Assembly (NCBI RefSeq): GCF_011386835.1
Contig: NC_088802.1
Location: forward strand, 38,688,001 to 38,752,000
From: Chrysemys picta bellii
Lineage: Eukaryota
Direction of reading: 5' to 3'
DNA: 64,000 nucleotides
The translations under genes and the position numbers were made by a program. The notes under the pieces were generated by a model. That model was not told the DNA's origin and ran no database searches. It saw only the letters and a list, made by a program, of their open reading frames with translations. Shown piece by piece: positions 3,701-42,711 of the stretch. Position 1 is the first letter of the stretch. Each line of letters opens with the position of its first letter.

Positions 3701-6700
3701 ATAAAAGGTTGGTACAAGGAGGAGGGAGAAAAATGTTTCTTCTTAACCTCTGAGGATAGGACAACAAGCAATGGGCTTAAATTGCAGCAAGGGCGGTTTA
3801 GGTTGGACAGTAGGAAAAACTTCCTGTCAGAGTAGTTAAGGACTGGAATAAATTGGCCAGGGAGGTTGTGGAATCTCCATCCTTGGGAATTTTTAAGAGC
3901 AGGTTGGACAAACACCTGTCAGGGATGGTCTAGATAATACTTAGTCCTGCCTTAAGTGCAGGGTACTGGACTAGATGACCTCTCAAGGTCCCTTCCAGTT
4001 CTAGGATTCTATGATTTATGGATGGAACATTGTTTGTTAGTTAGTTTGAGAGAGGAGGAACTTCTGCAAAGGAGAGAGAGAGACTTCCAGACCCCTTGCA
4101 AACTCTCAAACGAAAAGTGTTATTCAGTGTAATTTAGCAAACCAAGTATGAGACCTATAGCATCATTACCTTTTTCACCTATAGTTAGAACATACTTTTG
4201 TGTGGTTTGAAGTGCCAAGCACCCTCCACCTTTTCTTTCAAAAGTAACTCACACAAGTAAGAAATTTGCAGGATCAATTTTTGCATGGAAACTGTTTTCC
4301 TGTATATTGCATTTGCCTTGAGTTGATCCTACTAACTCTGACTTGTGAGTAACTTTTACTCAAGTATTCCATTCTCTTCATTTGGACCACTCATGGGAGT
4401 AACGATTTCATGGGTTGGACCCGATCACGTCAGATGCCGAGCAGCCTAAACTTCTATGGATTTCACTCAGAGATAAAGGTGTTCAGCCCCTTGAATGATC
4501 AGGCCCTTAAAATGCAAGATGCTTTTTTCGGGGGGGAGGGGGAGGGGAGATACTGTGTCATTTTAAGTGTTGGTAAGTATCAGCTGCATGTCATTCTGTA
4601 ATTATGAACCACGTTTATTTGAACGAGTAAAAAATGCAAAAAAAGCTTGATTGAGATATAATAAAACAGGCACAAACCTTTTTTTTTTTTTTTTTTAAGA
4701 TTTGAGGAAGCATTTTCAGCCTTTTCAACTCTTTCTACAAAGCCACTGAAAGAAATTATCTTGTTGGTGCTCTGCACTGAGTGCTATCTTTTCAATTTCA
4801 TCCTTCTTAAGAAATTGTCAATATAATAAACCTGCTTTTCATAGCTGTTGAATACTCACGTATCCCACTGACTTTAATTGGAGTTCTAGGTGCTCAGCAC
4901 TTTTGAAAAACCAAACCCTGTGTTTGTATCCCTATCCCTAGAGCCCTACGTATATACAAAATTTGTATCCGCATCTGATTCACAAAAATGATCTGCAGAT
5001 ATCTGCATCAGTGGATAGCCATGGATATCTGCAGATTTACAGAGCTTTAGATATAAAATTTGGATCGGTTTCCATCTGCGATCTGCAAAAATGTTCCACA
5101 GATATCCGTATCCATGGATATCTGTGATCCGGATATCTGTGGCTATAAAGTGGATATCTGCGGATTTGCAGGGCTCTACCTATTCCAGCTCCCTTCTGGA
5201 TTATTTTCTGTGAATTAGTTCTTACATGTAGGACTTTGGTTTATAAGTACAGTGCATATATTTATTTGTGTATAGCTTATCCTAACATTTATTTATTCTT
5301 TTCCAAAGGAAAAAAGGGCACAGAACAGAGAAGGATAAAAGTCAAAACAATAATATACCTTAGATTAATAAAATCATTTCAAAAAAGGAACATTACCTCC
5401 TCATTTTCATCATTCGTGCTCAGTGGATCAACCGATGTATTTTGCTTGTCATCATTTTTCTGTTTTTTACTACATTCCTGAAAGACATCATAGAAATGTG
5501 TGATATAAACCAAAAACCACTGCTCAAAAAACATTTTTAACTAGGTCTATGACTTCAGATTGTGTGTTACATTTTTCCAACATGTTTATTACAATGAAAA
5601 CATTGATGGGAAGTTCACCTGCTTGGCTTTTACAGCTTTGGGTGTATTTTTAACACTGGGGGCAGGGATAAGGAAAGAGAGCAGGGAGAAAGGTACTGCA
5701 GTATATATGGCAACCAGTATAGCAGGGGTGGCCAGCCTGTGGCTCCGGAGCCACATGCGGCTCTCTTCAGAAGTTAATATGCGGCTCCTTGTATAGGCAT
5801 CGACTCCGGGGCTGATGCTACAGGTGCCAACTTTCCAAGGGGGGGAGGTGCTCACTGCTCAACCCCTGGCTCTGCCACAAGCCCTGCCCCCACTCCACCG
5901 CTTCCTGCCCCCACCCCTCAGCCTGCTGTGCCCTCGCTCCTCCCCCCTAGAGCCTCCTCCATCCCAAGAAACAGCTGATCAGGAGGTGCAGGGAGGAAGG
6001 GGGAGGCGCTGATCAGCGGGGCAGCAGGCGGGCGGGAGGAGGCACTGGGAGCTGGGCGGGGAGCTGATGGGGGCTGCTGACATATTACTGTAGCTCTTTG
6101 GCAATGTACAGTGGTAAATTCTGGCTCCTTTTCAGGCTCAGGTTGGCCACCCCAGCACTATAGTGTACCATAAAATAGTCACATAAAGCCATTTGAAATG
6201 TAATCAGAATATAATGAAAATTGCATAAAAGATCATGTCACACACAAAAAATCAGCATCGGTAGGTTACATTAAATGTCATTCCCATCACAACTTGCCCA
6301 GAGAAATAAATATAATTAAACCTTTCCTGGAAAAAAAAACAGTTTATACATTATTATATGAATGGTATCAGTAAGGTAGACTACAAGAGGCAAGCTCATT
6401 TAGAACTATGCACTGTGTAGTGGCTATCTGTGACCTGGTAATCTATGACCAAATTCTATTACTGCACCACCGTCTCAGATATAATATATCAAAAAGTTCA
6501 AGTCACTTAACTGTGCACTGGCTGCAACTTAGCCCTGCCCTGCGGTATAAAGTTAAGCCCCTCCAGCGGCCCAGACTTGCTTTTCTTATTCAAAAAAGGA
6601 AACCCCTTGAAACACAAAGGATCCTCACATTATGTAACAGATCAAGCAAGTGAGTGTCTGACCTGGGGGTGGAGTCAAACTACTTACTGTTTCCCATGCA

Positions 6701-7169: not shown

Positions 7170-9878
7170 TTAGCTTCTTCAGACTCTATAATGGACCGGT
7201 TTTACAAAAAATAATTATCACACCACACGTTAGAGAATTTGCTTACATTGTAATGCGCAACAAATACCGCAGAGGAAAAGCTTTTAGGAAGATCAGTGGG
7301 CTGGATGCAGGGCCTGCAATCAGCATGATTAATGGCTTTAGTATTGTACAGAAACATTCCCTTCCCCCACCTCCTTGACATGCTTAGAATACAAATCTGT
7401 AACCCATGATTCTGATTCATGTTCATGCTGTAGATTCTGGCAGCGAATACATGTTGCTCTGGGGGTCGGGGACTTTGGTCATCCCTGTATTTTGCACAGT
7501 GGTAGCAAGCTTTGACACTACATGCAATTGATGCGAAATGAACATGCAAAACAAGGGTGGTAAAAGGGGTCACCCCTGCACAAGCAGAAGAGACTGTATC
7601 TTGCTCTAAGAGGAGACTTGGGACACTGCTTCTCGAGGGAAAACGCAGCTCTCTTCTTAATAATGGTGGGAGTGCTCCATAGACAGTGCCGGTGTAGACT
7701 CTGTCTTGCAGGAACATCAAAATGGGGGGGAACAACAGGTTCACACCGCCGCAATGGAGGAGGAAAAACTGCTTTTGATTTGAGTCTCGTGAATGTGGTG
7801 GCGCCTCATTCTCTGCTTAAGTGTTTAATAGCCCCCCTTTTAATCACACACACAAACCTCTCTTCTCTTATCCCAGTGATTACACAAATCGCTCCCTGTG
7901 GGGCACCTTAAGCCTTGAATTCTGATCATTTGCAATGAAACGATTCATGATTCTCACTACCATCATCGATTTTTTTTTTCGCAAAGTCAGCACAAGGCTA
8001 ACAATTTCCCACTGTCACAACCGCAGTACATTGCTTGGCACCCAGATGCAGAACAAAGGGGGGAAATCTAACATTTTTTATGTCTATACAAACACACAGA
8101 CGTGCTATCACAAGCTGTAACAAAATAACCACCATGCAGCTAAAGGAATGAAAGAGAAGAAAGGGGAATGAAAGAGAAAGGAAGGGAAAAGAATGAGATA
8201 CTGTACCTTGCTGCTTGCTTCATTTAACCTATAGTAAATTATGTCCTGGCTGGTAGAAATTAAACAGCATGAGGTAAAGTCTGGAGCATGTTGCGGCTAT
8301 TAAAGAGATCCATGTATATATTAGGGGAAAAAACTAGGCGACAAGGGTAGGGAGTCAAGCACAGGCTCCAGAAAAAGAAGCGAAGTGCTCTTCTTTTTCA
8401 CCTATTATTTAATGTAAATTCTTTCTGTCCTGCTTGTGCCCTGAGCGGCTCCCCCGGCAGCCTCTACTCCCTCCCTCCCACTCAGTTAGAAGTGTTCATT
8501 GTAGACCTGAGCGCTGTCACGTAGTCCCAGGCACTTATCTGGAACTGCAAGGGACAGCGCCTCTCTGCTGCAGAGGAGGTAAAGGTAACGCCTCATTCTC
8601 ACAGCTCGGCTAGGACAGAGTGGGGGCAACAACAGCAAAGAAGCTTCAAGACTGACATTCACACGTTGCTAAAGGGCACTGCTTTGTTTGTACACACTTC
8701 ACCACTCCATACAGGATATGCTTTTCTAGCGCCTCAAAAGCAGAAACTAACGTGAAGTTCCACAGATCTCCTTGAGTTTTTTTGTGTTAAGACATTGAGC
8801 TTTTTGTGTTGCTTTTTTTCACCATGACTATTAAAAAGAAACAAGAGAGCTTATCTCAAACTATAGTACCTACATTGTAGACTGACTTGCCCCGAGCCTG
8901 AAGGCTGTGCCTACTGTGCATATATTGATTTCAATAAACAATAAATGAACACAACTGCACTATTTGTTTGTGTCTTCCTTGAGAGACAAATAGAAATTGC
9001 TTCTATATTTTGTTCACTTGCAATAACAAAAATTGCAGAAAAGCGGCTTTGCCCACACCCTGCAGTGAGAAGGGAAGCTGTTTGTAGACTGTATTTGGCC
9101 CTTTTGGTGTCCCAAGCATAATTTAAAGTGCTGTTATAAATCAGAAAATAGCAAACAGTGGAAACATGTAAACTGTAATTATGCACAGTAGTATGGAGCC
9201 TCATATATCCTCTGCATGACAACTGTACTCACATTCCCTTTAAGGAGACAGTTAACATTAATGGCAAGTCATTGACATACAGAGAGATTTGAATAGCTTT
9301 TCCTGCTGTTCTTGAGTTTGTTTGTATGTAATATTCAACAATTACACATGGGCAAAACTGCATTCTTCTTTCCTTTTATTTTTTTCCCCTCTGAGTTTCT
9401 CTCTAAGACAGCTCCTTCTGGATTTAGGAAGGTTATGGAAAAATCATATTACTACAGCTAAATACAATGCAAATGATAATTTCCTGTTTCTATAACTCTG
9501 GTTTTCATGATTTAGTAAGCACAGTACATGTGATTTTACATGTTTCACTTCTCTTTTGTGACCTTTTACATTTTAAAGGCTAAAAAGTGACAATGACCTT
9601 GAATCTGTTTTTATTCAGATCCCAACTGGAAGCCTCAGCTATAATGGTATTATTTACCACAAAAGTTTTCCTTCCCAAAACAGCAGATATACCCAACTCC
9701 ATGAAAAAGACTTCTACAATTTAAACTGCAGATCCTTATGCACCTGGATCACAGGTTCAGTATTTTCAGACATTAATACAAAGGTCAAATTCAATATTGG
9801 GATCTCTTTTCCATTTTATCCTTTAAAACAAACAAACAAACAAACAAAAAAAACATGCAGCTATGCACATCTGTGCAG

Positions 9879-10020
9879 GAACATAAGAATGGTCATACTG
9901 GGTCAGACCAATGGTCCATCTAGCCCAGTATCCTGTCAATGTACTTCAGAAGGAATGAACAGAATAGGTAATCATCAAGTGATCCATCCCCTGTAGCCCA
10001 TTCCCAGCTTCTGGCAAACA
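9879..10020 (-). mobile_element. CR1 3'-end fragment
   Basis: GAACATAAGAATGGTCATACTGGGTCAGACCAATGGTCCATCTAGCCCAG, a typical reptile CR1 tail. Confidence 0.75.
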
Positions 10021-10063
10021 CTTCAAGCTTATGCTCAACTTCAGAGACTGTGCATTGTGTGAA

Positions 10064-10997
10064 TTTAGTGAGGCGGTGGGCTACCCCACAGCTCCGCTGA
10101 GGGCCGAACCTCCCCTAATACCAACGTGGGCGGAGCCACCGGGTCCGGCGCCCACCCCTCCGAGGTCACGGCCCCGACCCGGAAGTATAAAAGCCCGCCT
10201 GCAGAGCTTAGGGGAGCCTAGGCTGGTGGAGAGAGCAGATGTCTGTGGCCGAGCTTCTGCTTGGGAAACAGCTGCAGGCTGCGACCGGCCTGCTGACTCA
10301 CCGGGCCAGCCGAGCCTACCTCTCGCCCGCTACCCCGAGGAGGACTGGCTGAGCCTACTCTGTGCCAGCTACCCCAAGGAGGAGCTGAGCCTGCCCTTCG
10401 CTACCTACCCAGAGGAGCCAATGCTGGTGGAGAGCACAGACGACACTAGGACGGCCCAGGTACCATACGAGGGGGAGTGTGGAAGTAGCCCGGGGGCAGC
10501 CGACCCCAGTCTGGCTGCTGCACTGCCAGAGCCGATGTCAGTGTGTTGCAGCCAGGATCCCCACTGACAGCAGCGAGTTTCTGCTGCTGCTAGGGCCCCG
10601 GGCTGGGACGCAGTGGAGTGGGAGGGCCTGTGTCCCCCCTGCCACCCACTCCTTGGGTGGCAGACTCCCCCTTTTTCCCCTGGCCTAGAGAGGCTGGGTA
10701 CCTGCTTGACTATTGGCTTGCTGCCCCGCCCTGACCTAGAGCCTGGGCTGCCACAAACTGACTCAGCCCCTGCCCAAGGGCCGGGGTTTCTGATTGTCTA
10801 TTTAATTGCTGCCTCGCTCTGACCTAGGGCCTGGCCTGCTATAGACTTTGCCTCAGTCCCTGCTTACAGGCCTGAGCCCTAACTGTGTGTCTGTTGTCCC
10901 AGACTGCCGCCGGACCCGGACGGACGGCGGACTGTAGCGAGGCAGTGGGATACCCCACTGCCCCGCTGAGGGCCGAACCTCGGCCAACACTTCTACA
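10064..10997 (+). mobile_element. Solo-LTR-like retroelement with a 47-bp terminal direct repeat
   Basis: Termini T(T)TAG...TACA; possible TSD GTGAA/GGGAA; GC box 10128, CCGGAAGTATAAAAG 10179-10193; 10066-10112 repeated at 10935-10981 (42/47). Confidence 0.65.
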
Positions 10998-13310
10998 GGG
11001 AAGTAGTACTTCCTTTTGTTTGTTTAAAACCTGCTGCCTCTTAACTTCATTGGGTGACTCCTGGTTCTTGTAAAAACCTAAGGTACAAATTTACAGACTA
11101 ATTTTGGGTCTCTCTGTTTTTGGTGTCCAACCTGAGACATCTGTGACCCCAGACATTTATGGCCAGAGGTGCCAGTATTTGCATTTCCCATTGCCTTTAT
11201 TAGGAGTCATGAATTTTTGGCACTTCTGAAAATCAAGCTAGGATGTCTCACATTGGGGGTCCTGAAACTGAGGCATCCAAAATCAGTGGCCACTCTTGAA
11301 AATGTTAAGTGAATGTTACTGTATTCATACTGCGGGACTGGCACACAGCTCAGTTTGAGGTGTTATTTTCACAGCTGTGACAGTCAGCATTTCCTATGTT
11401 TCTGCCATCTCTATCCCAGATGCTGTCACATTCTATTTTACTCTCTTAATGTCATTTTTTTCCCCTACGGATATCACACTCAGTCTGCAGCTGTGAACCG
11501 TGTTTGAAGTTAGAAGTAAGTCTCTAAACATCTCAAGACTAGGAATTATTAAAGGGGGGCACTCCTCATGATATTTTCAGTTTGTGAAAGGGTTTCCTGA
11601 TCCTTAGATGATCGTCTCCAAAGTTGGCACAATGATTCTTCCACAGTCAAACTAAATTATATATTTTTAAATTAAATATTTATTAACTTTTGCAGAGGAA
11701 ATATTAAAGAATACTGTACTCCCATTTTTGAAATGTTTCTGTTTCCCTCATATGTCTTTGGATTCCTAAAGTAACACAGCCACAATCCACATAAAAACTG
11801 CAAGCTTCACACAAACACATTTTGATAACATCTTGGACACAGGCTACTTTTGACACTTTATCATTACACAGTTATTCCTCTACTCCAAGAACATATACAT
11901 AGATTTCCCCAAGATCAGCTGATTCAACTGCTAAGAACCATCAGCTACTTTTGACTCTGCATGTGCACCTAGTGAGCTGGATGGGGGGAGGATGGCAATC
12001 TGGCTGAGAAGAAACTATAGGAGGAGGGTGTTGCTTATGAGGGAGAGAGCGGACCTCTAGGAAAGCCAACAGAGATGTGGATGACAGGCAGAGTTGAATG
12101 GATCTTAAAGGTTGAGTCAGGCTTTAGAAGGGGCAGGAGGGTTAACAGGGATGTGCAAGGCAAGGGTGCCTGATGGAGAAATCCTGTGTCTCTGTGCTGA
12201 GGCATTAACACTTGAAGGGATCCCCTGGCATTGATGCCTCTACTCCCTGGCACACTTAGTTAGGCTGCAGAACCGTGGAGAACCTTCATGCATCAATTCG
12301 TTGACCCATAAAGGTTTGGCACTCCTGGTCACTACTGCCTCAGCTCTCTGGAGCACCAGTCAGTAGCACCATGAAGGCAGAGGGTATTTGTACTAAGCCA
12401 TCATCACATCAAGTGGCAAGTGCTCCTTTCAGTGCTGCTACCTTCCTGTGGAAGAAGTAGAAGCAGCAGTAGTGAGTGCACCCTTTAAGTGCCAGTGCCT
12501 TCATGCAGAGGCATTGGGCTACCCCACACTGCTTGTATAGCTTTGCCCACCCCACCCCATCCACAATCTCCCAACTCCTCCATACCTAATTTCCTCTCTT
12601 GCTCCCCACTTACCCAGTCACCCCTGGGCTCTACCAGCTTCCCATTCACCCATGTCCAGCTGGAATCACATGTGAGAGAACTTGTTAAAAGCAGCCCATA
12701 CCAAACCAGCAGTCTGAGTTGTCAGTAGCCGCTTTCCCCACAGGGAAGAATACTTTGAAAATTGTAAAAGGGGCAAATTTACGTTTTCACCCCTCACAAC
12801 TGTCAGTTGGTTCAGGAACTGAAGAAAAGAACCTATCATGGAGTATGATATTGAGCCAATTAGAAATCTTCAAGGTGCTCTAGCCCTTGAAAGTATATCT
12901 GTTATATGAAACTGTAGAACAAACATTGCAGCATGCTCTATGCAGGCAGGAAGACAGAACACTAAATTGTGGACATGAAAGAGAATTTTACTGGGTTCAA
13001 TCCTCAATGATCCCAGTCCTGCACTTCTTAATGGGAATTTTGCCTGAGTAAGGAGTGCAGGAACAGGACTTATGCATGTGCATTTTCTTAATTATAAATT
13101 AATGGGGATAACAAGTTTTACAGTGCAGCATCGGTTTTATTAGTAGAATTAATTCTAACGGTCTCATTAAACCTAGAAGAGTAGGCAGAGGGAGACTTTT
13201 TTTTTCCTTATTTCATGGTAGGATCATTATTCAGTTCACTTTATAGACTGTCAATTAATGATTTTCTATTTAAGCTATTTGCCTTCCACAAGTGAATATT
13301 GTACTATGAA

Positions 13311-34490: not shown

Positions 34491-36095
34491 GAATCATAGA
34501 CTATCAGGGTTGGAAGGGACCTCAGGAGGTCATCTAGTCCAACCCCCTGCTCAAAGCAGGACCAATTCCCAACTAAATCATCCCAGCCAGGGCTTTGTCA
34601 AGCCGGGCCTTAAAAACCTCCAAGGAAGGAGACTCCACCACCTCCCTAGGTAACGCATTCCAGTGTTTCACCACCCTCTTGGATATCTCCATTATTTATT
34701 ATTATCTCCTAGAGCTGGAAGGGACCTTGAAAGGTCATTGAGTCCAGCCCCCTGCCTTCACTAGCAGGACCAAATACTGATTTTGCCCCAGATCCCTAAG
34801 TGGCCCCCTCAAGGATTGAACTCACAACCCTGGGTTTAGCAGGCCAATGCTCAAACCACTGAGCTATCCCTCCCCCCTAGTGAAACAGTGTTTCCTAATA
34901 TCCAACCTAGGCCTCCCCCATTGCAACTTGAGACCATTGCTCCTTGTTCTGTCATCTGCCACCACTGAACAGCTGAGCTCCATCCTCTTTGGAACCCCCC
35001 TTCAGGTAGTTGAAAGCAGCTATCAAATCCCCCCTCATTCTTCTCTTCTGGAGACTAAACAATCCCAGTTCCCTCAGCCTCTCCTCATAAGTCATGTGCT
35101 CCAGACCCCTAATCATTTTTGTTGCCCTCTGCTGGACTCTTTCCAATTTTTCCACATCCTTCTTGTAGTGTGGGACCCAAAACTGGACACAGTACTCCAG
35201 ATGAGGCCTCACCAATGTCAAATAAAGGGGAACGATCATGTCCCTCAATCTGCTGGTAATGCCCCTACTTATACAGCCCAAAATGCTGTTAGCCTTCTTG
35301 GCAACAAGAGCACATTGTTGACTCATATCCAGCTTCTCGTCCACTGTGACCCCTAGGTCCTTTTCTGCAGAACTGCTACCTAGCCATTCGGTCCCTAGTC
35401 TGTAACAGTGCATAGGATTCTTCTGTCATAAGTGCAGGACTCTGCACTTATCCTGTTGAACCTCATCAGGGTATTTTTTTGGCCCAATCCTCTAATTTGT
35501 CTAGGTCCCTCTGTATCTGATTCCTACCCTCCAGTGTATCTACCACGCCTCCCAGTTTAGTGTCATCTGCAAACTTGCTGAGAGTGCAGTCCACACCATC
35601 CTCCAGATCATTAATAAAGATATTAAACAAAACCAGCCCCAGGACTGACCCGTGGGGCACTCCGCTTGAAACCGGCTGCCAACTAGACAGGGAGCCATTG
35701 ATCACTACCCGTTGAGCCCGACGATCTAGCCAGCTTTCTATCCACCTTACAGTCCATTCATCCAGCCCATACTTCTTTAACTTGGCAGCAAGAATACTGT
35801 GGGAGACTGTATTAAAAGCTTTGCTAAAGTCAAGGAATAACACATCCACTGCTTTCCCCTCCTCCACAGACCCAGTTATCTCATCATAGAAGGCAATTAG
35901 GTTAGTCAGGCACGACTTCCCCTTGGTGAATCCATGCTGACTAGTCCCGATCCCTTTCCTCTCCTCGAAGTGTTTCATAATTGATTCCTTAGGAACCTGC
36001 TCCATGATTTTTCCAGGGACTGAGGTGAGGCTGACTGGCCTGTAATTCCCCGGATCCTCCTCCTTCCCTTTTTTAAAGATGGGCACTACATTAGC
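34491..36095 (-). mobile_element. 5'-truncated CR1 LINE (reverse transcriptase and 3' end), frameshifted
   Basis: [65 protein letters not shown]; TCTATGATTC tail at 34491. Confidence 0.95.
34679..34876 (-). mobile_element. Tortoise Pol III SINE (tRNA-derived head, CR1-like tail) inserted in the CR1
   Basis: Minus strand GGGGGAGGGATAGCTCAGTGG (A box)...GAGTTCAATCC (B box)...GACCTTTCAAGGTCCCTTCCAG tail; interrupts CR1 sequence CACCCTC|CTAGTG. Confidence 0.9.
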
Positions 36096-36585
36096 TACAT
36101 CAATTCATCTAGATATTTGCCTAATTTAACAACAGGCTACATAAAAAGCACTAGCAAAGTCAGTACAAACTAAAGTTTCATACAGGCAAATCACTTGTTT
36201 ATTCTGCTCTGTATACTATACACTGATAAGTACAATATTTATATTCTAATTGATTTATTTTATAATTAGATAGTAAAAAGGAGAAAGAAAGCAATTTTTC
36301 AGTAATAGTGGGCTGGGACACTTTTGTATTTTTATGTTTGAGTTTGTAAGCAAGTTGTTTAAGGGTATGTCTACACTACGAAATTAGTTCGAATTTATAG
36401 AAGCCGGTTTTATTGAAATCGGTTGTATACAGCCGATTGTGTGTGTCCACACATAAAATGCTCTAGGTGCTCTAGTCGGCGGACCGCATCCACAGTACGA
36501 GGCTAGCGTCGACTTCCGGAGCATTGCACTATGGGTAGCTATCCCACGGCTATCCCACAGTTCCCGCAGTCTCCGCCGCCCCTTG

Positions 36586-38278
36586 GAATTCTGGGTTGAG
36601 ATCCCAATGCCCGGATGATGCAAAACAGTGTCGCGGGCGGTTCTGGGTACATGTCGTCAGGCCCCTCCCCCCCCGTCACAGCAACGGCAGACAATAGATT
36701 TGCGCCTTTTTACCTGGGTTACCTGTGCAGACAACATGGAGCCCGCTCAGCTCAGCTGAGCTCACCGTCACCATATGTCCTCTGGGTGCCGGCAGACGTG
36801 GGACTGCATTGCTACACAGCAGCAGCTGCTAACTGCCTTTTGGCGGTAGACGGTGCAGTAGACTGGTAGCCTTCATCGGCGATCTGGGTGCTGGCAGCCG
36901 TGGGGCTTGCCTTTTGGCAGTGGATGGTGTATTACGACTGTTAGCCATCCTATTACAAGTCGGGTCATCGCACGTTAGCAGAGTCTTCCCCGAGCAGCCG
37001 ATCGTGCAATAGGCCTGAAGACCATCGTCATACACTAACTGCCAAGCGCCCCGTATTTGCTGCCAAGCACCCAGAAAGATGCCGAGGGCTATCAGTCACG
37101 CTGCACCGTCATCTTAAGATGTAAAAAATAGATTTGCTCTGTATTCATTTGCTTCCCCCTCCCTCCGTCAAATCAACGGCCTGCTAAACCCAGGGTTTTC
37201 AGTTTAATCTTTGGGGGGACCATTCTGTGTGACAGTTGTTTGTGTTTCTCCCTGATGCACAGCCACTGTTCTTCATTTTAATTCCCTGTACCTGTACGCC
37301 ATGTCGTCACTTGGCCCGCCCTCCCTCCTTCCCCTAGTCCGTCAGATACTACTTTCGCGCCTTTTCTTTGAATTCTGGGTTGAGATCCCAATGCCCGGAT
37401 GATGCAAAACAGTGTCGCGGGTGGTTCTGGGTACATGTCGTCAGGCCCCTCCCCCCCCGTCACAGCAACGGCAGACAATAGATTTGCGCCTTTTTACCTG
37501 GGTTACCTGTGCAGACAACATACCACGGCAAGCATGGAGCCCGCTCAGCTCAGCTGAGCTCACCGTCACCATATGTCCTCTGGGTGCCGGCAGACGTGGG
37601 ACTGCATTGCTATACAGCAGCAGCTGCTAACTGCCTTTTGGCGGTAGACGGTGTAGCATGACTGATAGCCGTGGGGCTGGCAGCTGTAGGGCTGCATTGC
37701 ACCAGCCCCTTGCCCTTTGATAGGCGATGGTATATTATGACTGGTACCCATCGTCGTCATACTGGAGTGGCTGTCAATCATGGCCACCTGGGCAGACATG
37801 TTTCGATGATGATGGCTACCAGTCGTAGTATACTATTTTCTGCCAATTGCCCAGTATTGTCTGCTAAGCACCCAGAAGAGGCCGAGGGCGATGCTGGGTG
37901 CTGGCGGACGTGGGGCTGGCAGACGTGGGGCTGCATTGCTACACAGCAGCAGCCCCTTGCAGACGATGGTATATTATGATTGGTATCCATCATCATCATA
38001 CTGGAGAGGCTATCACTCATGCTGCACCGTCGGCTGCCAGCTTAAGATGTAAAAAATAGATTTGTTCTGTATTCATTTGCTTTCCCTTCCTCCGTGAAAT
38101 CAACGGCCTGCTAAGCCCAGGGTTTTCAGTTTAATCTTTGGGGGGACCATTCTGTGTGACAGTTGTTTGTGTTTCTCCCTGTTCCTGTACCTGTACGCCA
38201 TGTCGTCACTCGGCCCTCCCTCCCTCCCGCCCTCCCTCCTTCTCCTGGTCCATCAGATACTACTTTCGCGCCTTTTTT
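36586..38278 (+). repeat. Tandem duplication of the Harbinger 5' leader (unit 1 36586-37369, unit 2 37370-38278)
   Basis: Both units begin GAATTCTGGGTTGAGATCCCAATGCCCGGATG and share near-identical first ~270 bp and last ~230 bp. Confidence 0.85.
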
Positions 38279-38309
38279 CTGACCAGGCGCCATAGCTAGC
38301 ACTGGGATC

Positions 38310-39611
38310 ATGGAGCCCGCTCAGATCACCGCGGCAATTATGAGCACTATGAACACCACGCGCATTGTCCTGGAGTATATGCAGAGCCAGGACATGCCAA
38401 GGCGAAACCCGGACCAGCCGAGGAGGCGATTGCAGCGCGGCGACGAGAGTGATGAGGAAATTGACATGGACATAGACCTCTCACAAGGCACAGGCCCCAG
38501 CAATGTGGAAATCATGGTGTCACTGGGGCAGGTTCATGCCATGGAACGCCGATTCTGGGCCCGGGAAACAAGCACAGACTGGTGGGATCGCATCGTGCTG
38601 CAGGTATGGGACAATTCCCAGTGGCTGCGAAACTTTCGCATGCGTAAGGGCACTTTCATGGAACTTTGTGACTTGCTTTCCCCTGCCCTGAAACGCCAGG
38701 ATACCAAGATGAGAGCAGCCCTCACAGTTGAGAAGCGAGTGGCGATAGCCCTGTGGAAGCTTGCAACGCCAGACAGCTACCGGTCAGTCGGGAATCAATT
38801 TGGAGTGGGCAAATCTACGGTGGGGGCTGCTGTGATCCAATTTGCCAGGGCAATGAAAGACCTGGTGATAGCAAGGGTAGTGACTCTGGGCAACGTGCAG
38901 TCAATAGTGGATGGTTTTGCTGAAATGGGATTCCCAAACTGTGGCGGGGCCATAGACGGAACCCATATCCCTATCTTGTCACCGGAGCACCAAGCCACCG
39001 ACTACGTAAACCGCAAGGGGTACTTTTCAATGCTGCTGCAAGCCCTGGTGGATCACAAGGGACGTTTCACCAACATCAACGTGGGATGGCCGGGAAAGGT
39101 ACATGATGCTCGCGTCTTCAGGAACTCTGCTCTGTTTCGAAAGCTGGAGGAAGGGACTTTCTTCCCGGACCAGAAAGTGACCGTTGGGGATGTTGAAATG
39201 CCTATCGTGATCCTTGGGGACCCAGCCTACCCCTTAATGCCATGGCTCATGAAGCCGTACACAGGCAGCCTGGACAGGAGTCAGGACCTGTTCAACTACA
39301 GGCTGAGCAAGTGCCGAATGGTGGTGGAATGTGCATTTGGACGTTTAAAAGCGCGCTGGCGCAGCTTACTGACTCGCTCAGACCTCAGCGAAAAGAATAT
39401 CCCCATTGTTATTGCTGCTTGCTGTGCGCTCCACAATATCTGTGAGAGTAAGGGGGAGACCTTTATGGCGGGGTGGGAGGTTGAGGCAACTCGCCTGGCC
39501 GCTGATTACGCGCAGCCAGACACGAGGGCGATTAGAGGAGCACAGCAGGGCGCGGTGCGCATCAGAGAAGCTTTGAAAACGAGTTTTGTGACTGGCCAGG
39601 CTACTGTGTGA
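38310..39611 (+). CDS. Harbinger DDE transposase (DDE_Tnp_4/HARBI1-like family), 433 aa, intact ORF
   Basis: Motifs NFRM..F..L, HTH-like YRSVGNQFGVGKSTV, AIDGTHIP, NRKGYFS, GWPGKVHDARVF, LGDPAYPL, RMVVECAFGRLKARWR, CCALHNIC. Confidence 0.96.
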   Translation: MEPAQITAAIMSTMNTTRIVLEYMQSQDMPRRNPDQPRRRLQRGDESDEEIDMDIDLSQGTGPSNVEIMVSLGQVHAMERRFWARETSTDWWDRIVLQVWDNSQWLRNFRMRKGTFMELCDLLSPALKRQDTKMRAALTVEKRVAIALWKLATPDSYRSVGNQFGVGKSTVGAAVIQFARAMKDLVIARVVTLGNVQSIVDGFAEMGFPNCGGAIDGTHIPILSPEHQATDYVNRKGYFSMLLQALVDHKGRFTNINVGWPGKVHDARVFRNSALFRKLEEGTFFPDQKVTVGDVEMPIVILGDPAYPLMPWLMKPYTGSLDRSQDLFNYRLSKCRMVVECAFGRLKARWRSLLTRSDLSEKNIPIVIAACCALHNICESKGETFMAGWEVEATRLAADYAQPDTRAIRGAQQGAVRIREALKTSFVTGQATV

Positions 39612-39745
39612 AACTTCTGTTTGTTTCTCCTTGATGAACCCTCCAACCCCCCCCCCCCCCCCCGACCCGGTTCACTCTACTTCCCTGTAAACCAACCACC
39701 CCACCCCACCCTCCCCTCCCCAATTCGAGCACCGCTTGCAGAGGC

Positions 39746-39785
39746 AATAAAGTCATTGTTTTTTCACATTCATGCATTCTTTATT
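39746..39785. terminator. Back-to-back polyA signals of the convergent transposase (+, 39746-39751) and Myb (-, 39780-39785) genes
   Basis: AATAAA on each strand, 28 bp apart, downstream of both stop codons. Confidence 0.65.
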
Positions 39786-39877
39786 AGTTCCTCACAGAAG
39801 TAGGGGGATAATTGCCAAGGTAGCCTGGGATGGGTGGGGGAGGAGGGATGGAAAAGGACACACTGCATTTTAAAACT

Positions 39878-40380
39878 TTAACTCTTATTGAAGGCCAGCC
39901 TTCTGATGCTTGGGCGATCATCTGGGGTGGAGTGACTGGGTGGATGGAGGCCCCCCCACCGTGTTCTTGGGCGCCTTGGTGAGGAGGCTATGGAACTTGG
40001 GGAGGAGGGTTGTTGGTTACACAGGGGCTGTAGCGGCGGTCTCTGCTCCTGCTGCCTTTCCTGCAGCTCAACCATACGCTCGAGCATATCAGTTTGATGC
40101 TCCAGCAGACGGAGCATTGACTCTTGCCGTCTGTCTGCAAGCTGACGCCACCTATCGTCTTCAGCCCGCCACTTGCTCTTTTCATCCCGCCATTCAGCCC
40201 GCCACCTCTCCTCTCGTTCATATTGGGCTTTTCTCATCTCCGACATTGACTGCCTCCACGCATTCTGCTGTGCTCTATCAGCGTGGGAGGACATCTGCAG
40301 CTCCGTGAACATATTGTCCCTCGTCCTACGTTTTCTCTTTCTAATGTTCACGAGCCTCTGCGAAGGAGAAACATTTGCAG
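39878..40380 (-). pseudogene. Harbinger Myb/SANT-like protein, exon 2 (NLS-like RKRKRR, coiled coil, Pro-rich tail)
   Basis: Acceptor ccaccag|CTGCAAAT in phase 1 with exon 1; spliced frame 346 codons plus stop. Confidence 0.88.
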
Positions 40381-40807
40381 CTGGTGGAGGAGAAGGGAGA
40401 GGTGGTTAAAAAAAGACACATTTTAGAGAACAATGGGTACACTCTTTCATTACAAGGTCGCATATTTCGGCTTGCAGACAGCCATGGTAGGCCACAGTGT
40501 TTTGGCTTTTTTAACCTTCTTAACATGCGGGAAAGGTTGCAAACAGCAGCGCATTTCCCATATCAAGGATGAATTGGGTTGTCCATTTAAAATGGGTTTT
40601 CAATGTAAAAGGAGGGGCTGCGGTTTCCCGGTTAACATGCGGCACAAACACAAGTAAACCACCCCCCCCCCATACACGATTCTCTGGGATGATCACTTCA
40701 CCCCTCCCCTCCACCGCGTGGTTAACAGCGGGGAACATTTCTGTTCAGAAGAGCAGGAACGGGCGCCTCTGAATGTCCCCTTAATAAAATCACCCCATTT
40801 CAACCAG

Positions 40808-41104
40808 GTGACCGTGAATGATATCACTCTCCTGAGGATAACAAAGAGAGATAAGGAATGGATGTTGTCTGTATGCCAGCAAACACCGGGACCATACGCT
40901 GCCATGCTTTGTTATGCAATGATTCCAGACTACGTGCTACTGGCCTGGCGTGGTAAAGTGTCCTACCATGGCGGACGGGATAAGGCAGCCCTCCCCAGAA
41001 ACCTTTTGCAAACGCTTTGGGAGTACATAAAGGAGAGCTTTCTGGAGATGTCCCTGGAGGATTTCCGCTCCATCCCCATACATGTTAACAGACTTTTCCA
41101 GTAG
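40808..41104 (+). CDS. Putative BEN-domain terminal exon (98 aa) nested antisense in the Harbinger Myb intron
   Basis: Phase-0 acceptor ccccatttcaaccag|GTG, stop TAG 41102-41104, ATTAAA 41139-41144 plus U/GU tract; peptide follows a BEND3-type hydrophobic pattern (recalled, not searched). Confidence 0.62.
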   Translation: MTVNDITLLRITKRDKEWMLSVCQQTPGPYAAMLCYAMIPDYVLLAWRGKVSYHGGRDKAALPRNLLQTLWEYIKESFLEMSLEDFRSIPIHVNRLFQ

Positions 41105-41198
41105 ATGTACTGGCTGCGATTGCCAGGGCAAATTAATCATTAAACACGCTTGCTTTTTTGTGTGTAATGTTTACAAATATTTACAAAGTTACACTCAC

Positions 41199-41736
41199 CA
41201 GAGGTCTCCTGTGTGCCCTGAGGGTCTTGGGTGAGTTCGGGGGTTACTGGTTCCAGGTCCAGGGTCACAAACATATCCTGGCTGTTGGGGAAACCGGTTT
41301 CTCCGCTTCCTTGCTGCTGTGAGCTACCTACAGTACCTCCATCCTCATCTTCCTCGTTCCCCGAACCGTCTTCCCTGTGTGTTTCTCCAGTGAGAGAGTC
41401 ATAGCACACGGTTGGGGTAGTGGTGGCTGCACCCCCTAGGATCGCATGCAGCTCCGCGTAGTAGCGGCAAGTTTGCGGCTCTGCCCCAGACCTTCCGTTT
41501 GCTTCTCTGGCTTTGTGGTAAGCTTGCCGTAGCTCCTTAATTTTCACGCGGCACTGCTGTGTGTCCCTGTTATGGCCTCGGTCCTTCATGGCCTTGGAGA
41601 TCTTTTCTAATACTTTTCCATTTCTTTTACTGCTACGGAGTTAAGCTATCACTGCTTCATCTCCCCATATGGCGAGCAGATCTCGTACCTCCCGTTCGGT
41701 CCATGCTGGAGCTCTTTTGCGATCCTGGGACTCCAT
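41199..41736 (-). pseudogene. Harbinger Myb/SANT-like (trihelix) DNA-binding protein, exon 1, with premature TAA at codon 32 (41641-41643)
   Basis: MESQDRKRAPAWTEREVRDLLAIWGDEAVIA*LRSSKRNGKVLEKISKAMKDRGHNRDTQQCRVKIKELRQAY...CRYYAELHAILG; donor TCTG|gtgagt. Confidence 0.9.
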
Positions 41737-42711
41737 CACGGTTACCTGTGCTGATGAGCTCTGCGTGGTCACCTGTGCTCTCCACGCTGAGCAAACAGGA
41801 AATGAAATTCAAACATTCGCGGGTCTTTTCCTGTCTACCTGGTCAGTGCATCTGAGTTGAGAGTGCTGTCCAGACCGGTCACAATGAAGCACTGTGGGAT
41901 AGCTCCCGGAGGCCAATAACGTCGAATTCCGTCCACACTACCCCAATTCCGACCCGCAAAGGCCGGTTTTATCGCTAATCCCCTCGTCGGAGGTGGTGTA
42001 AAGAAACCGGTTTAAAGGACCCTTTAAGTCGAAAGAAAGGGCTTCGTTGTGTGGACGTGTCCAGGCTTAATTCGGTTTAACGCTGCTAAAGTCGACCTAA
42101 ACCCGTAGTGTAGACCAGGCCTAAGAGAGGTGAAACTTGGCAGTAGGCAGGACAAATCAGACTCCTGAAAGGAGTACATTAGTCTGGAAATGTTGAGAGC
42201 CACTGAATTAAACCAAAATGGCATATGCACATGCTGCTGGTCAGATACCAGAAAGTGGAGCAGCTGTCTGCAGAACAGAAAGAAGAGACCTACTCTTATT
42301 GGTAAACAGGAAGGGACTGTGTGGCTACAAGTTTTGAGAATTAAAGCAGGCCTCTGCCAGTCTAGGTGCTAGTGACTCTCCTTCAGCCAGTAAGGTGACT
42401 CCTAGTCCAGGGGTGCTGGAACAATTTTTATAATGGGGGTGCTAATGGTGGAAACCACATATTTGGTGTTTGTTCAAGCCAGGGGGTGTGGCAGCATTGT
42501 CCCAGACAGCTGGGGTTGGGAAGCTGCATGGACCAATGAAGAGAAATGAATTTGAAGTGTGTTAAAGTCTCATTTGGACTTCATTTCTAAGGCACATCTG
42601 TAAAGGTATGGGGGAACTAGCATTCTATAGTGGGATGGTAACATTTTAAACACTCATGCCTTTATTTAAATCCCTTCCATTTCCCACCATGAATAACATT
42701 GCTTCTGACTA

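What the first reader, a model, noticed from the sequence alone, without database searches (positions are those of the whole stretch)
40808..41144. Hidden third gene in a Harbinger transposon: BEN-domain exon nested antisense inside the Myb intron
Seen in sequence: inside the 818-bp intron of the minus-strand Myb gene, the + strand has a complete terminal-exon layout. There is an acceptor (aatcaccccatttcaaccag|GTG, phase 0), 98 open codons, TAG at 41102-41104, ATTAAA at 41139-41144 and a downstream U/GU tract. Peptide: VTVNDITLLRITKRDKEWMLSVCQQTPGPYAAMLCYAMIPDYVLLAWRGKVSYHGGRDKAALPRNLLQTLWEYIKESFLEMSLEDFRSIPIHVNRLFQ. From memory of BEN domains (BEND3/BANP/NACC1/Insv), it follows the pattern IT..D..W......PG.YA..L...MIPD, then S..G..K..L, then L..L..YI...F, then D(F/W)..I...VN. 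Established: PIF/Harbinger elements are described as two-gene systems (DDE transposase plus Myb/SANT). BEN is a DNA-binding/chromatin domain. Inference: this family carries a second DNA-binding module, which could bear on regulation, targeting, or the origin of host BEN genes. I know of no description of this arrangement but cannot check the literature.
Basis: partly seen in the sequence, partly recalled or inferred. Interest (0 to 1): 0.92.

Follow-up and report, generated by a model that had tools for sequence, protein, structure and literature searches.

The report
BEN-fold exon in turtle Harbinger transposon
This turtle Harbinger transposon carries, besides its transposase and Myb-like genes, a conserved extra coding exon for a BEN-type DNA-binding fold that lies backwards inside the Myb gene's intron; it is probably spliced onto the start of the transposase, and host genes also pick it up as a last exon.

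Summary
Window 40808-41104 (+) is a phase-0 acceptor, 98 codons and TAG, followed by ATTAAA. It lies in the 818-nt Myb intron, whose splicing is seen in RNA-type contigs of four runs.

It is not a chance ORF. It has 46 homologues (E down to 4e-44), and their alignments start at the acceptor. Eight turtle Harbinger copies from several subfamilies keep the order transposase(+), Myb exon 2(-), this exon(+), Myb exon 1(-). For this frame dN/dS is 0.18-0.44, matching the transposase; the other five frames carry stops.

It is probably not a free-standing gene. RefSeq models join the transposase's first ~98 codons (donor CAG|GTATGG, 38603/38604) to this exon, giving a ~196-aa protein without the DDE domain. 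Other models join host genes (RAB3C, CDK6, PFKFB4, TEDC1) to it. I found no direct RNA junction for the transposase-to-BEN splice, and the function is inferred.

No searched paper describes this arrangement. The scan found it before on other DNA of this genome (s1-314110, s1-312471).

The parts
36363..42121 (.). Harbinger/PIF element, 5,759 bp, flanked by TAA target-site duplications (36360-36362 and 42122-42124)
   Evidence: Sequence read; inverted repeat I3; only one copy in the window
36363..36397 (+). left terminal inverted repeat (GGGTATGTCTACACTACG...)
42087..42121 (-). right terminal inverted repeat
38310..39611 (+). transposase ORF, 433 aa, open, DDE_Tnp_4
   Evidence: PF13359 E 1.5e-36
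38601..38609 (+). candidate 5' splice site CAG|GTATGG inside the transposase ORF (after codon 98, phase 0). The equivalent site is used by RefSeq models in Malaclemys
   Evidence: (P0047 exon 1 ends at the homologous site of L001)
39746..39751 (+). AATAAA 135 nt after the transposase stop. It is the likely poly(A) signal of the full-length transposase mRNA and lies inside the proposed 38604-40807 intron
39878..40380 (-). Myb-like gene exon 2 (coiled-coil/basic C-terminal part), including the stop codon
   Evidence: exon boundary from the RNA joint
40381..41198 (-). Myb-like gene intron, 818 nt, GT..AG
   Evidence: joint 40380->41199 in all four runs
40774..40807 (+). branch-point and polypyrimidine region ending in the acceptor AG. 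DNA similarity to the 71%-identical Malaclemys copy resumes here
   Evidence: (blastn block starts at element position 4412 = window 40774)
40808..41104 (+). terminal coding exon: 98 codons for a BEN-fold domain plus TAG
41139..41144 (+). ATTAAA poly(A) signal of the BEN exon, kept in L001 and L005 and followed by a T/GT-rich tract
41199..41736 (-). Myb-like gene exon 1 (Myb/SANT trihelix), with an in-frame TAA at 41641-41643 in this copy
39780..39785 (-). AATAAA on the minus strand, about 95 nt past the Myb stop: likely Myb poly(A) signal, convergent with the transposase 3' end

Best explanation
Window 40808-41104 is a real terminal coding exon kept by selection. It encodes a ~98-aa BEN-fold (DNA-binding type) domain and is a third coding module of a turtle PIF/Harbinger lineage. 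It lies on the transposase strand, nested antisense in the intron of the Myb-like partner gene.

It has no start codon of its own and is expressed by splicing. The element's own product most likely comes from the transposase pre-mRNA. When the 5' splice site inside the ORF (CAG|GTATGG, 38603/38604) is joined to the acceptor at 40807/40808, the HTH and DDE parts and the transposase poly(A) site (39746) are removed as an intron. The result is a ~196-aa protein: transposase residues 1-98 plus the BEN domain, ending at ATTAAA 41139. When that splice is not made, the full transposase is produced.

Inferred mechanism: the short isoform keeps the transposase N-terminal end, the part the Myb-like protein is reported to bind. 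It swaps catalysis for a second DNA-binding domain. It would therefore act as an element-encoded regulator or adaptor of transposition, either competing with the transposase for the partner or tethering the complex to DNA.

Side effect: acceptor + ORF + poly(A) works as a natural gene trap. Copies inserted in sense orientation in host introns yield host-BEN chimeric isoforms.

My odds:
- Real, selected BEN-fold exon of the element: ~0.9.
- Spliced to the transposase 5' region: ~0.6 (this exact donor ~0.5).
- Regulator/adaptor role: ~0.35.
For: Shown:
- Homologues: 46 at E<=1e-3, 7 at <=1e-30. Their alignments start at residues 29-33 of the 128-aa ORF, which is the acceptor, and end at the hits' C-termini.
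- Gene order: Tnp(+), Myb exon 2(-), BEN(+), Myb exon 1(-) in L001, L002, L004, L005, L006, L007 and L008, from 4-5 turtle species. BEN identity in these copies is 41-79%.
- Exon boundaries: a phase-0 acceptor AG lies just before the domain in all nine copies, with stops upstream in L002 and L004 and a stop right after the domain.
- Selection: NG86 dN/dS in this frame is 0.22 (bootstrap 0.12-0.41), 0.18 and 0.44. The other five frames give 0.4-3.3, with stops in at least one copy of each pair. The transposase gives 0.21, 0.18 and 0.51 for the same pairs.
- Splicing: RefSeq models XP_053864860/1 (P0047, P0005) join ...WWDRIVLQ to the exon. In L001 exon 1 ends at the site homologous to window 38603, and exon 2 starts at the site homologous to 40808.
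- Gene-trap side effect: host+BEN RefSeq isoforms exist for RAB3C, TEDC1, CDK6, PFKFB4 (in two species), ST13 and an SLC6A9-like gene. P0001's first exon lies outside the element.
- Poly(A) signals: only three + strand hexamers occur in the element, and two sit just after the Tnp stop and the BEN stop.

Against: - No RNA contig with the 38603->40808 junction appeared among the 15 joints listed (17 more were not shown). All RNA data were short contigs without strand information.
- The donor's GT and +5 G are forced by the Val-Trp codons. Its +3 base varies (A, G, C, T) among subfamilies, and one subfamily has no GT there. So donor conservation is not independent evidence, and other gene models use other donors (P0013, P0002, P0008, P0059).
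- All DNA copies used for dN/dS were found through predicted proteins, which biases them toward open frames. One pair (window vs the deleted copy L001) gives dN/dS 1.17.
- The Pfam BEN HMM and an A1 profile search against PDB sequences give no hit for the turtle domain.
- The complex prediction of the transposase N-terminus with the Myb pieces gave no verdict.
- DNA binding and any effect on transposition are untested.
Confidence: 0.6

Rival explanations
1. The exon belongs to an independent third gene, with its own promoter and a short first exon inside the element (for example between the transposase stop and 40808). On this reading it is not part of the transposase transcription unit.
For: An earlier follow-up on another copy of this genome read it as a two-exon gene (s1-312471). 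Gene models disagree on the upstream exon. The donor inside the transposase ORF is not conserved beyond what the coding sequence forces.
Against: No annotated model has a first exon in the 39612-40807 interval. That interval is the least conserved part between copies: blastn similarity to L001 resumes only 34 nt before the acceptor. The two RefSeq isoforms that lie wholly within an element start in the transposase 5' region. The foreign 21 nt joined at 40806 in run X30 is not found in the element.
Confidence: 0.12
2. The exon is a piece of a host BEN gene (of the Pat-like kind) that an ancestral Harbinger picked up. It is carried along without any function for the element, and its visible products are only accidental host-gene chimeras.
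For: The closest reviewed structural match is a host protein, Xenopus Pat (E 8.9e-7, TM 0.89, 26% identity). Many annotated products are host+BEN chimeras. Capture of host fragments by DNA transposons is well known (established knowledge).
Against: Constraint equals that of the transposase across subfamilies (dN/dS 0.18-0.22 against 0.18-0.21). Acceptor, frame and stop are kept at 41-79% protein identity in at least five subfamilies. A passenger would decay. An origin by capture is compatible with the best explanation; only 'no function' is at issue.
Confidence: 0.1
3. The exon's selected role is the gene trap itself: the element gains by producing host-BEN fusion transcripts, or by terminating host transcripts cleanly at its own poly(A) site. 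It would not make an element-only protein.
For: Host+BEN isoforms are annotated in at least six turtle genes, and one (PFKFB4) is shared by Trachemys and Chrysemys. DNA transposons commonly carry acceptors that favour capture (bioRxiv 10.1101/2020.05.07.082677).
Against: A trap needs only an acceptor and a poly(A) site. It does not explain amino-acid-level constraint on a folded 98-aa domain. Element-internal TnpN-BEN models exist.
Confidence: 0.08
4. It is a chance open frame in intron DNA with fortuitous splice-like and poly(A)-like motifs.
For: About a dozen ORFs of this length are expected by chance in 64 kb (own estimate). Pfam gives no hit, and the single-sequence AF2 model was poor (pLDDT 52.7).
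Against: Homologues reach E 4e-44, and diverged ones in gecko and fish were found. Selection is specific to this frame. The model with an alignment has pLDDT 94.5.
Confidence: 0.01

Closest known systems
PIF/Harbinger DNA transposons (e.g. Harbinger3_DR; domesticated pair HARBI1/NAIF1)
   Same: TAA target-site duplication, short TIRs, a DDE_Tnp_4 transposase and a separately encoded Myb/SANT trihelix protein in convergent orientation.
   Different: The papers read describe two ORFs only (PMC9179366, PMC9392472, PMC4482050). This lineage has a third conserved coding exon (BEN fold) inside the Myb intron, and probably an alternatively spliced transposase-N-terminus/BEN product.
BEN domain proteins (Pfam PF10523: BEND3, BANP, BEND6, NACC1, Drosophila Insv)
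   Different: Only 8-16% identity to solved BEN domains. The Pfam HMM does not reach its threshold. It is encoded by a transposon exon. DNA binding is not shown.
Xenopus laevis germ-plasm protein Pat (O73622) and the chordate 'BEN domain-containing protein' cluster of ~292 aa
   Same: These are the closest matches outside turtles by structure: TM 0.89, rmsd 1.5 Å, 26% identity over residues 186-281, and TM 0.85 for the Atlas cluster, in which 33% of members carry Pfam BEN.
   Different: They are annotated as host genes with a different N-terminal part. No link to a transposon was examined here.
Alternatively spliced transposon products that share the transposase N-terminus but lack catalysis (P-element 66-kDa/KP repressors; En/Spm TnpA vs TnpD), from my own knowledge
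   Same: One transcription unit, a splice choice between a catalytic and a non-catalytic protein, and a shared N-terminal part.
   Different: Here the non-catalytic form gains a new DNA-binding fold from a distant exon embedded in the partner gene's intron. A repressor activity is only inferred.
Host-transposase fusion genes formed by 'transposase capture' (Cosby et al., bioRxiv 10.1101/2020.05.07.082677)
   Same: A transposon-borne acceptor just upstream of a DNA-binding domain is spliced to upstream host exons as an alternative isoform.
   Different: The captured module is not the transposase's own DNA-binding domain but an accessory BEN exon. That paper's main text mentions neither BEN nor Harbinger.

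Membership tests
PIF/Harbinger superfamily | 3-bp TWA target-site duplication and terminal inverted repeats | tested here: met
   TAA at 36360-36362 and 42122-42124; TIRs at 36363-36397 and 42087-42121
PIF/Harbinger superfamily | DDE_Tnp_4-type transposase | tested here: met
   PF13359 E 1.5e-36, 433-aa open frame
PIF/Harbinger superfamily | second gene for a Myb/SANT trihelix protein | tested here: met
   PF13837 on exon 1. The two exons are joined by an intron seen spliced in four runs. This copy has one in-frame stop at 41641-41643
BEN domain (Pfam PF10523) | match to the Pfam BEN HMM at or above the gathering score (23.2 bits) | tested here: not met
   No BEN hit for the window peptide even at E<=10. 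The best homologue, P0026, scores 20.8 bits (E 4.7e-4); P0041 scores E 0.15
BEN domain (Pfam PF10523) | BEN fold: a compact helical domain that superposes on solved BEN structures | tested here: met
BEN domain (Pfam PF10523) | significant sequence homology to proteins classified as BEN | tested here: met
   Window ORF vs fish P0026 gives E 3.8e-10 in a 1.8-billion-protein search. P0026's close relatives P0055, P0058 and P0061 are named 'BEN domain-containing protein' by UniRef. ESM features give BEN clusters at 0.94
BEN domain (Pfam PF10523) | sequence-specific DNA binding | not testable with these tools
   Needs EMSA, SELEX or DAP-seq with the recombinant domain
Transposon regulators made by alternative splicing of the transposase transcript | an mRNA joining the transposase 5' exon to an alternative 3' exon that lacks the catalytic domain | tested here: inconclusive
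   RefSeq models P0047 and P0005 use the homologous donor and acceptor in L001. No such joint was listed in the contigs laid on the window. The donor is not conserved beyond coding constraint
Transposon regulators made by alternative splicing of the transposase transcript | the short product alters transposition | not testable with these tools
   Needs a transposition assay
Host-transposon fusion by exon capture | a transposon-borne acceptor spliced to upstream host exons, in frame | tested here: met
   Met at the level of annotation only. Chimeric RefSeq isoforms exist for RAB3C, TEDC1, CDK6, PFKFB4, ST13 and an SLC6A9-like gene. The loci confirm that the exon sits in an element inside the host gene. 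One loose end at 40806 in run X30 fits such a junction

The most novel reading that the evidence does not exclude
Some vertebrate DNA transposons carry BEN-domain accessory modules: Harbinger in turtles, and perhaps a Tc1/mariner-like element in croaker. These modules would serve the element as a self-encoded regulator of transposition. Because they come with a ready acceptor and poly(A) site, they would also repeatedly seed new host BEN-domain proteins. Candidate examples are the gecko KDM4B-BEN isoform and possibly the Pat-like BEN family of the frog germ plasm.
Probability: 0.25. Interest if true: 0.82.

Novelty: new variant of a known kind. Interest (0 to 1): 0.68.

Why it matters
PIF/Harbinger elements are the textbook two-protein DNA transposons, and surveys of hundreds of families list only the transposase and the Myb-like partner. 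This lineage has a third module as constrained as the transposase: a BEN DNA-binding fold hidden antisense in the partner gene's intron and reached only by splicing. That would add a new layer of self-regulation or targeting to the system.

It also gives a concrete source of new host DNA-binding proteins. The same acceptor/ORF/poly(A) cassette already appears as the last exon of alternative isoforms of several turtle genes. Diverged relatives sit in a gecko KDM4B intron and next to a Tc1-type transposase in a fish.

The origin of the many lineage-specific BEN genes becomes testable with these loci. The case also shows that ORF-based transposon annotation can miss spliced coding modules.

Tried and rejected
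- Direct Pfam scans of the 98-aa and 128-aa peptides gave no BEN hit, only noise (DUF416, MAAL_N). The per-member scan of alignment A1 gave two members with sub-threshold BEN.
- phmmer of the ORF and hmmsearch of the A1 profile against PDB sequences gave nothing meaningful.
- Single-sequence AF2 gave pLDDT 52.7 with a wrong mixed alpha/beta topology. I discarded it for the alignment-based model.
- The search for homologous proteins with the zebrafish protein's C-terminal region found only the protein itself.
- Read laying on 37300-41900 with four runs confirmed the Myb intron. It listed no joint from the transposase donor into 40808. The summed depth over the exon cannot be used, because it tracks sequence conservation among copies.
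- The 21 foreign letters joined at 40806 in X30 were not found in the window or in any locus, so their source is unknown.
- Complex prediction of the transposase N-terminus (L005) with the two Myb exon products gave no verdict (score 0.02, partner pLDDT <50). This is neither for nor against binding.
- The Sinzelle et al. 2008 paper is not held. I used its summary in PMC9392472 instead.
- Logan-derived homologues are plain ORF calls on ~1-kb contigs and show no spliced upstream part.
- Chance ORF: rejected.
- No other copy of the element exists in the window.

Full report
**1. Observation**

It has the acceptor ...ccccatttcaaccag|GTG, 98 open codons, TAG at 41102-41104, ATTAAA at 41139-41144 and a T/GT-rich tract after that.
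- The surrounding element is a 5,759-bp PIF/Harbinger copy (36363-42121). It has TAA target-site duplications and GGGTATGTCTACAC... inverted termini.
- It carries an open 433-aa DDE_Tnp_4 transposase at 38310-39611 (+; PF13359 E 1.5e-36). It also carries a two-exon Myb/SANT gene on the minus strand (PF13837). The Myb gene has one in-frame stop at 41641-41643 in this copy.
- The 818-nt Myb intron (40381-41198) is confirmed. A joint 40380->41199 with CT..AC ends (GT..AG on the minus strand) is present in contigs of all four runs laid on the region.

**2. The exon is real**

- A full HMMER scan of 1.84 billion representatives with the 128-aa stop-to-stop ORF found 46 proteins at E<=1e-3 and 7 at E<=1e-30.
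- In nearly all of them the alignment starts at ORF residues 29-33. That is the predicted acceptor, not the upstream part of the ORF. The alignment runs to the C-terminus of the hit.
- The hits are mostly turtle gene models from Malaclemys, Chrysemys, Trachemys, Mauremys, Chelonia, Caretta, Gopherus, Emys and Pangshura. Outliers come from geckos and teleosts.
- I fetched the DNA of eight turtle copies (L001, L002, L004-L008). Each shows the same order: transposase (+), Myb exon 2 (-), this exon (+), Myb exon 1 (-). Protein identity to the window is 43-77% for the transposase, 41-79% for the exon and 35-67% for Myb.
- In all nine copies, including a gecko one, a polypyrimidine tract and an AG lie in phase 0 a few codons before the conserved D/E-I-(T/S)-L-L-R start of the domain. 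Stops lie just upstream in L002 and L004, and a stop follows the domain.
- Between the window and the 71%-identical Malaclemys copy, nucleotide similarity is lost across the upstream intron. It resumes 34 nt before the acceptor.

**3. Selection**

|---|---|---|
| window-L006 | 0.22 (bootstrap 0.12-0.41) | 0.21 |
| L005-L006 | 0.18 (0.08-0.35) | 0.18 |
| window-L005 | 0.44 | 0.51 |

- These are Nei-Gojobori values.
- The other five frames of the same DNA give 0.4-3.3 and carry stops in at least one copy of every pair, up to 6 per copy. So the exon is as constrained as the catalytic gene.
- Two caveats apply. The copies were found through predicted proteins, so they are biased toward open frames. 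And the pair window-L001 gives 1.17; L001 is an internally deleted copy.

**4. Fold**

- The Pfam BEN HMM does not hit the peptide, and an A1 profile finds no BEN chain by sequence in the PDB.
- With a 28-sequence alignment, AlphaFold2 gives a confident model: pLDDT 94.5, pTM 0.85, five helices and a small hairpin.
- Foldseek's 13 best PDB matches are all BEN domains.
- AlphaFold DB clusters and the ESM Atlas return BEN proteins.
- The best reviewed match is the C-terminal domain of the Xenopus germ-plasm protein Pat (E 8.9e-7, TM 0.89, 26% identity).
- By sequence the link is transitive. The window ORF matches fish P0026 at E 3.8e-10. P0026 reaches Pfam BEN at E 4.7e-4, 20.8 bits, just under the 23.2-bit cut-off. 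Its near relatives are named 'BEN domain-containing protein' by UniRef.
- I therefore call it a divergent BEN-fold domain. Membership of PF10523 by the HMM criterion is not met for this copy.

**5. How the exon is expressed**

- The exon has no ATG of its own.
- Two RefSeq isoforms of a Malaclemys locus (P0047, P0005) consist of the transposase N-terminus up to ...WWDRIVLQ followed directly by the exon.
- Mapped on L001, their exon 1 ends at ...ttgcag|GTATGG and their exon 2 starts at ...aaccag|GTGAGC.
- The window has the same sites: ctgCAG|GTATGG at 38603/38604, after codon 98 in phase 0, and the acceptor at 40807/40808. Joined, they give transposase residues 1-98 plus 98 BEN residues, about 196 aa, without the HTH and DDE parts.
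- The transposase's own AATAAA (39746) lies inside the intron so defined. The BEN exon has its own ATTAAA (41139). These are two of only three such hexamers on the + strand of the element.
- This layout sets up a choice. Either the transcript is polyadenylated at 39746 and encodes the transposase, or the splice is made and it encodes TnpN-BEN.
- There are weaknesses.
  - The donor's GT and +5 G are dictated by the Val-Trp codons. Its +3 base varies among subfamilies, and one subfamily has CAA|AT there.
  - Older Chelonia, Pangshura and Lepidochelys models use other donors.
  - No 38603->40808 joint was among the 15 joints listed from the contigs.
- Hence my odds are ~0.6 for splicing from the transposase 5' region and ~0.5 for this exact donor.

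**6. Gene-trap behaviour**

- Many hits are host proteins whose last exon is replaced by this exon:
  - RAB3C isoform X3 and TEDC1 isoform X5 (Chrysemys);
  - CDK6 isoform X2 (Malaclemys);
  - PFKFB4 isoforms in both Trachemys and Chrysemys;
  - the hsc70-interacting protein isoform X2 (Emys);
  - a glycine-transporter-like model (Mauremys).
- The Atlas also holds a GTPBP1 'isoform X4' cluster with the domain.
- The fetched loci confirm that the exon sits in a Harbinger copy inside the host gene. P0001's first exon lies 1.2 kb outside the element.
- In run X30, two contigs carry 21 foreign letters immediately before 40806. This is what a splice into the acceptor would give. The letters are not from the element.
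- This fits the 'transposase capture' route described by Cosby et al., here with an accessory domain.

**7. Mechanism (inferred)**

[quoted passage not shown] 2008).
- A protein that keeps that N-terminal end but has a BEN DNA-binding domain in place of the nuclease would be expected to bind the same partner. It could compete with the transposase as a self-limiting repressor, like the short P-element products. Or it could add a second DNA contact to the complex.
- The + strand pre-mRNA also runs antisense across Myb exon 2 and the Myb intron, which could produce double-stranded RNA.
- None of this was tested. The one complex prediction gave no verdict.

**8. Novelty**

- Full-text searches for BEN with Harbinger or with transposon found no description of this arrangement. 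Neither did three Harbinger surveys; all describe two ORFs.
- The scan itself had already met the same module on other DNA of this genome (s1-314110, s1-312471). Follow-ups there reached a BEN-fold reading, and one of them the same splicing idea. On this window, s1-335678 proposes the same fusion.
- I rate it a new variant of a known kind of element. Interest is fairly high, limited by the lack of direct transcript and functional evidence.

Noticed in passing
L009:8298-12329 (Larimichthys crocea): A diverged relative of the BEN domain (P0055, 238 aa, coiled coil + BEN, 16 near-identical members) lies at 10001-11014 (+). Next to it is a DDE_3/Tc1-type transposase gene at 8810-9835 (-). Both sit between long inverted repeats (8298-8612 and 11823-12329, 98-100% identical). 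This looks like a Tc1/mariner-like element with a BEN accessory gene.
   Followed up: partly
L003:16559-16852 (Gekko kuhli, KDM4B region): A BEN terminal exon (37% identical to the window's) with its own acceptor sits in a KDM4B-like gene, with no transposase or Myb within 10 kb. The Gekko and Sphaerodactylus proteins are 94% identical over the last 102 residues. It may be a domesticated KDM4B-BEN isoform.
   Followed up: partly
model m07c90625dea0 vs Swiss-Prot O73622: The Xenopus germ-plasm protein Pat (residues 186-281) is the best reviewed structural match (TM 0.89, 26% identity). A ~292-aa chordate 'BEN domain-containing protein' cluster matches at TM 0.85.
   Followed up: no
window 39878-41736 vs L005: Between the window and L005, synonymous divergence of the Myb exons (dS 0.8-1.0) is three to four times that of the transposase and the BEN exon (dS 0.25-0.26). 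This is odd because the BEN exon lies between the two Myb exons. Possible causes are module exchange between subfamilies or alignment effects in low-complexity parts. It remains unexplained.
   Followed up: no
window 36582-38282: The 5' part of the element holds internal duplications: 36582-36871 resembles 37366-37670 at 93%, and 37087-37371 resembles 38008-38282 at 79%. They are absent from the 4.3-kb Malaclemys copy L005.
   Followed up: partly
L005:7257-11600 (Malaclemys terrapin): In this copy the transposase (429 aa), the BEN exon and both Myb exons are all free of internal stops.
   Followed up: partly
window 40945-40955: A GGTAAAG donor-like site lies inside the BEN exon. A Chelonia model (P0013) splices out of the homologous place into a + strand ORF antisense to Myb exon 1 (window ~41669-41860).
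   Followed up: no
window 35466-36086 (-): A reverse-transcriptase-like ORF (CR1/LINE type by its motifs) lies directly upstream of the Harbinger copy.
   Followed up: no
L004:30948-35150 (Chelonia mydas): A second, oppositely oriented Harbinger copy of the window's subfamily lies in the same locus. Only the last ~20 codons of its BEN exon are still recognisable. This is the one copy met without selecting for an open frame.
   Followed up: no
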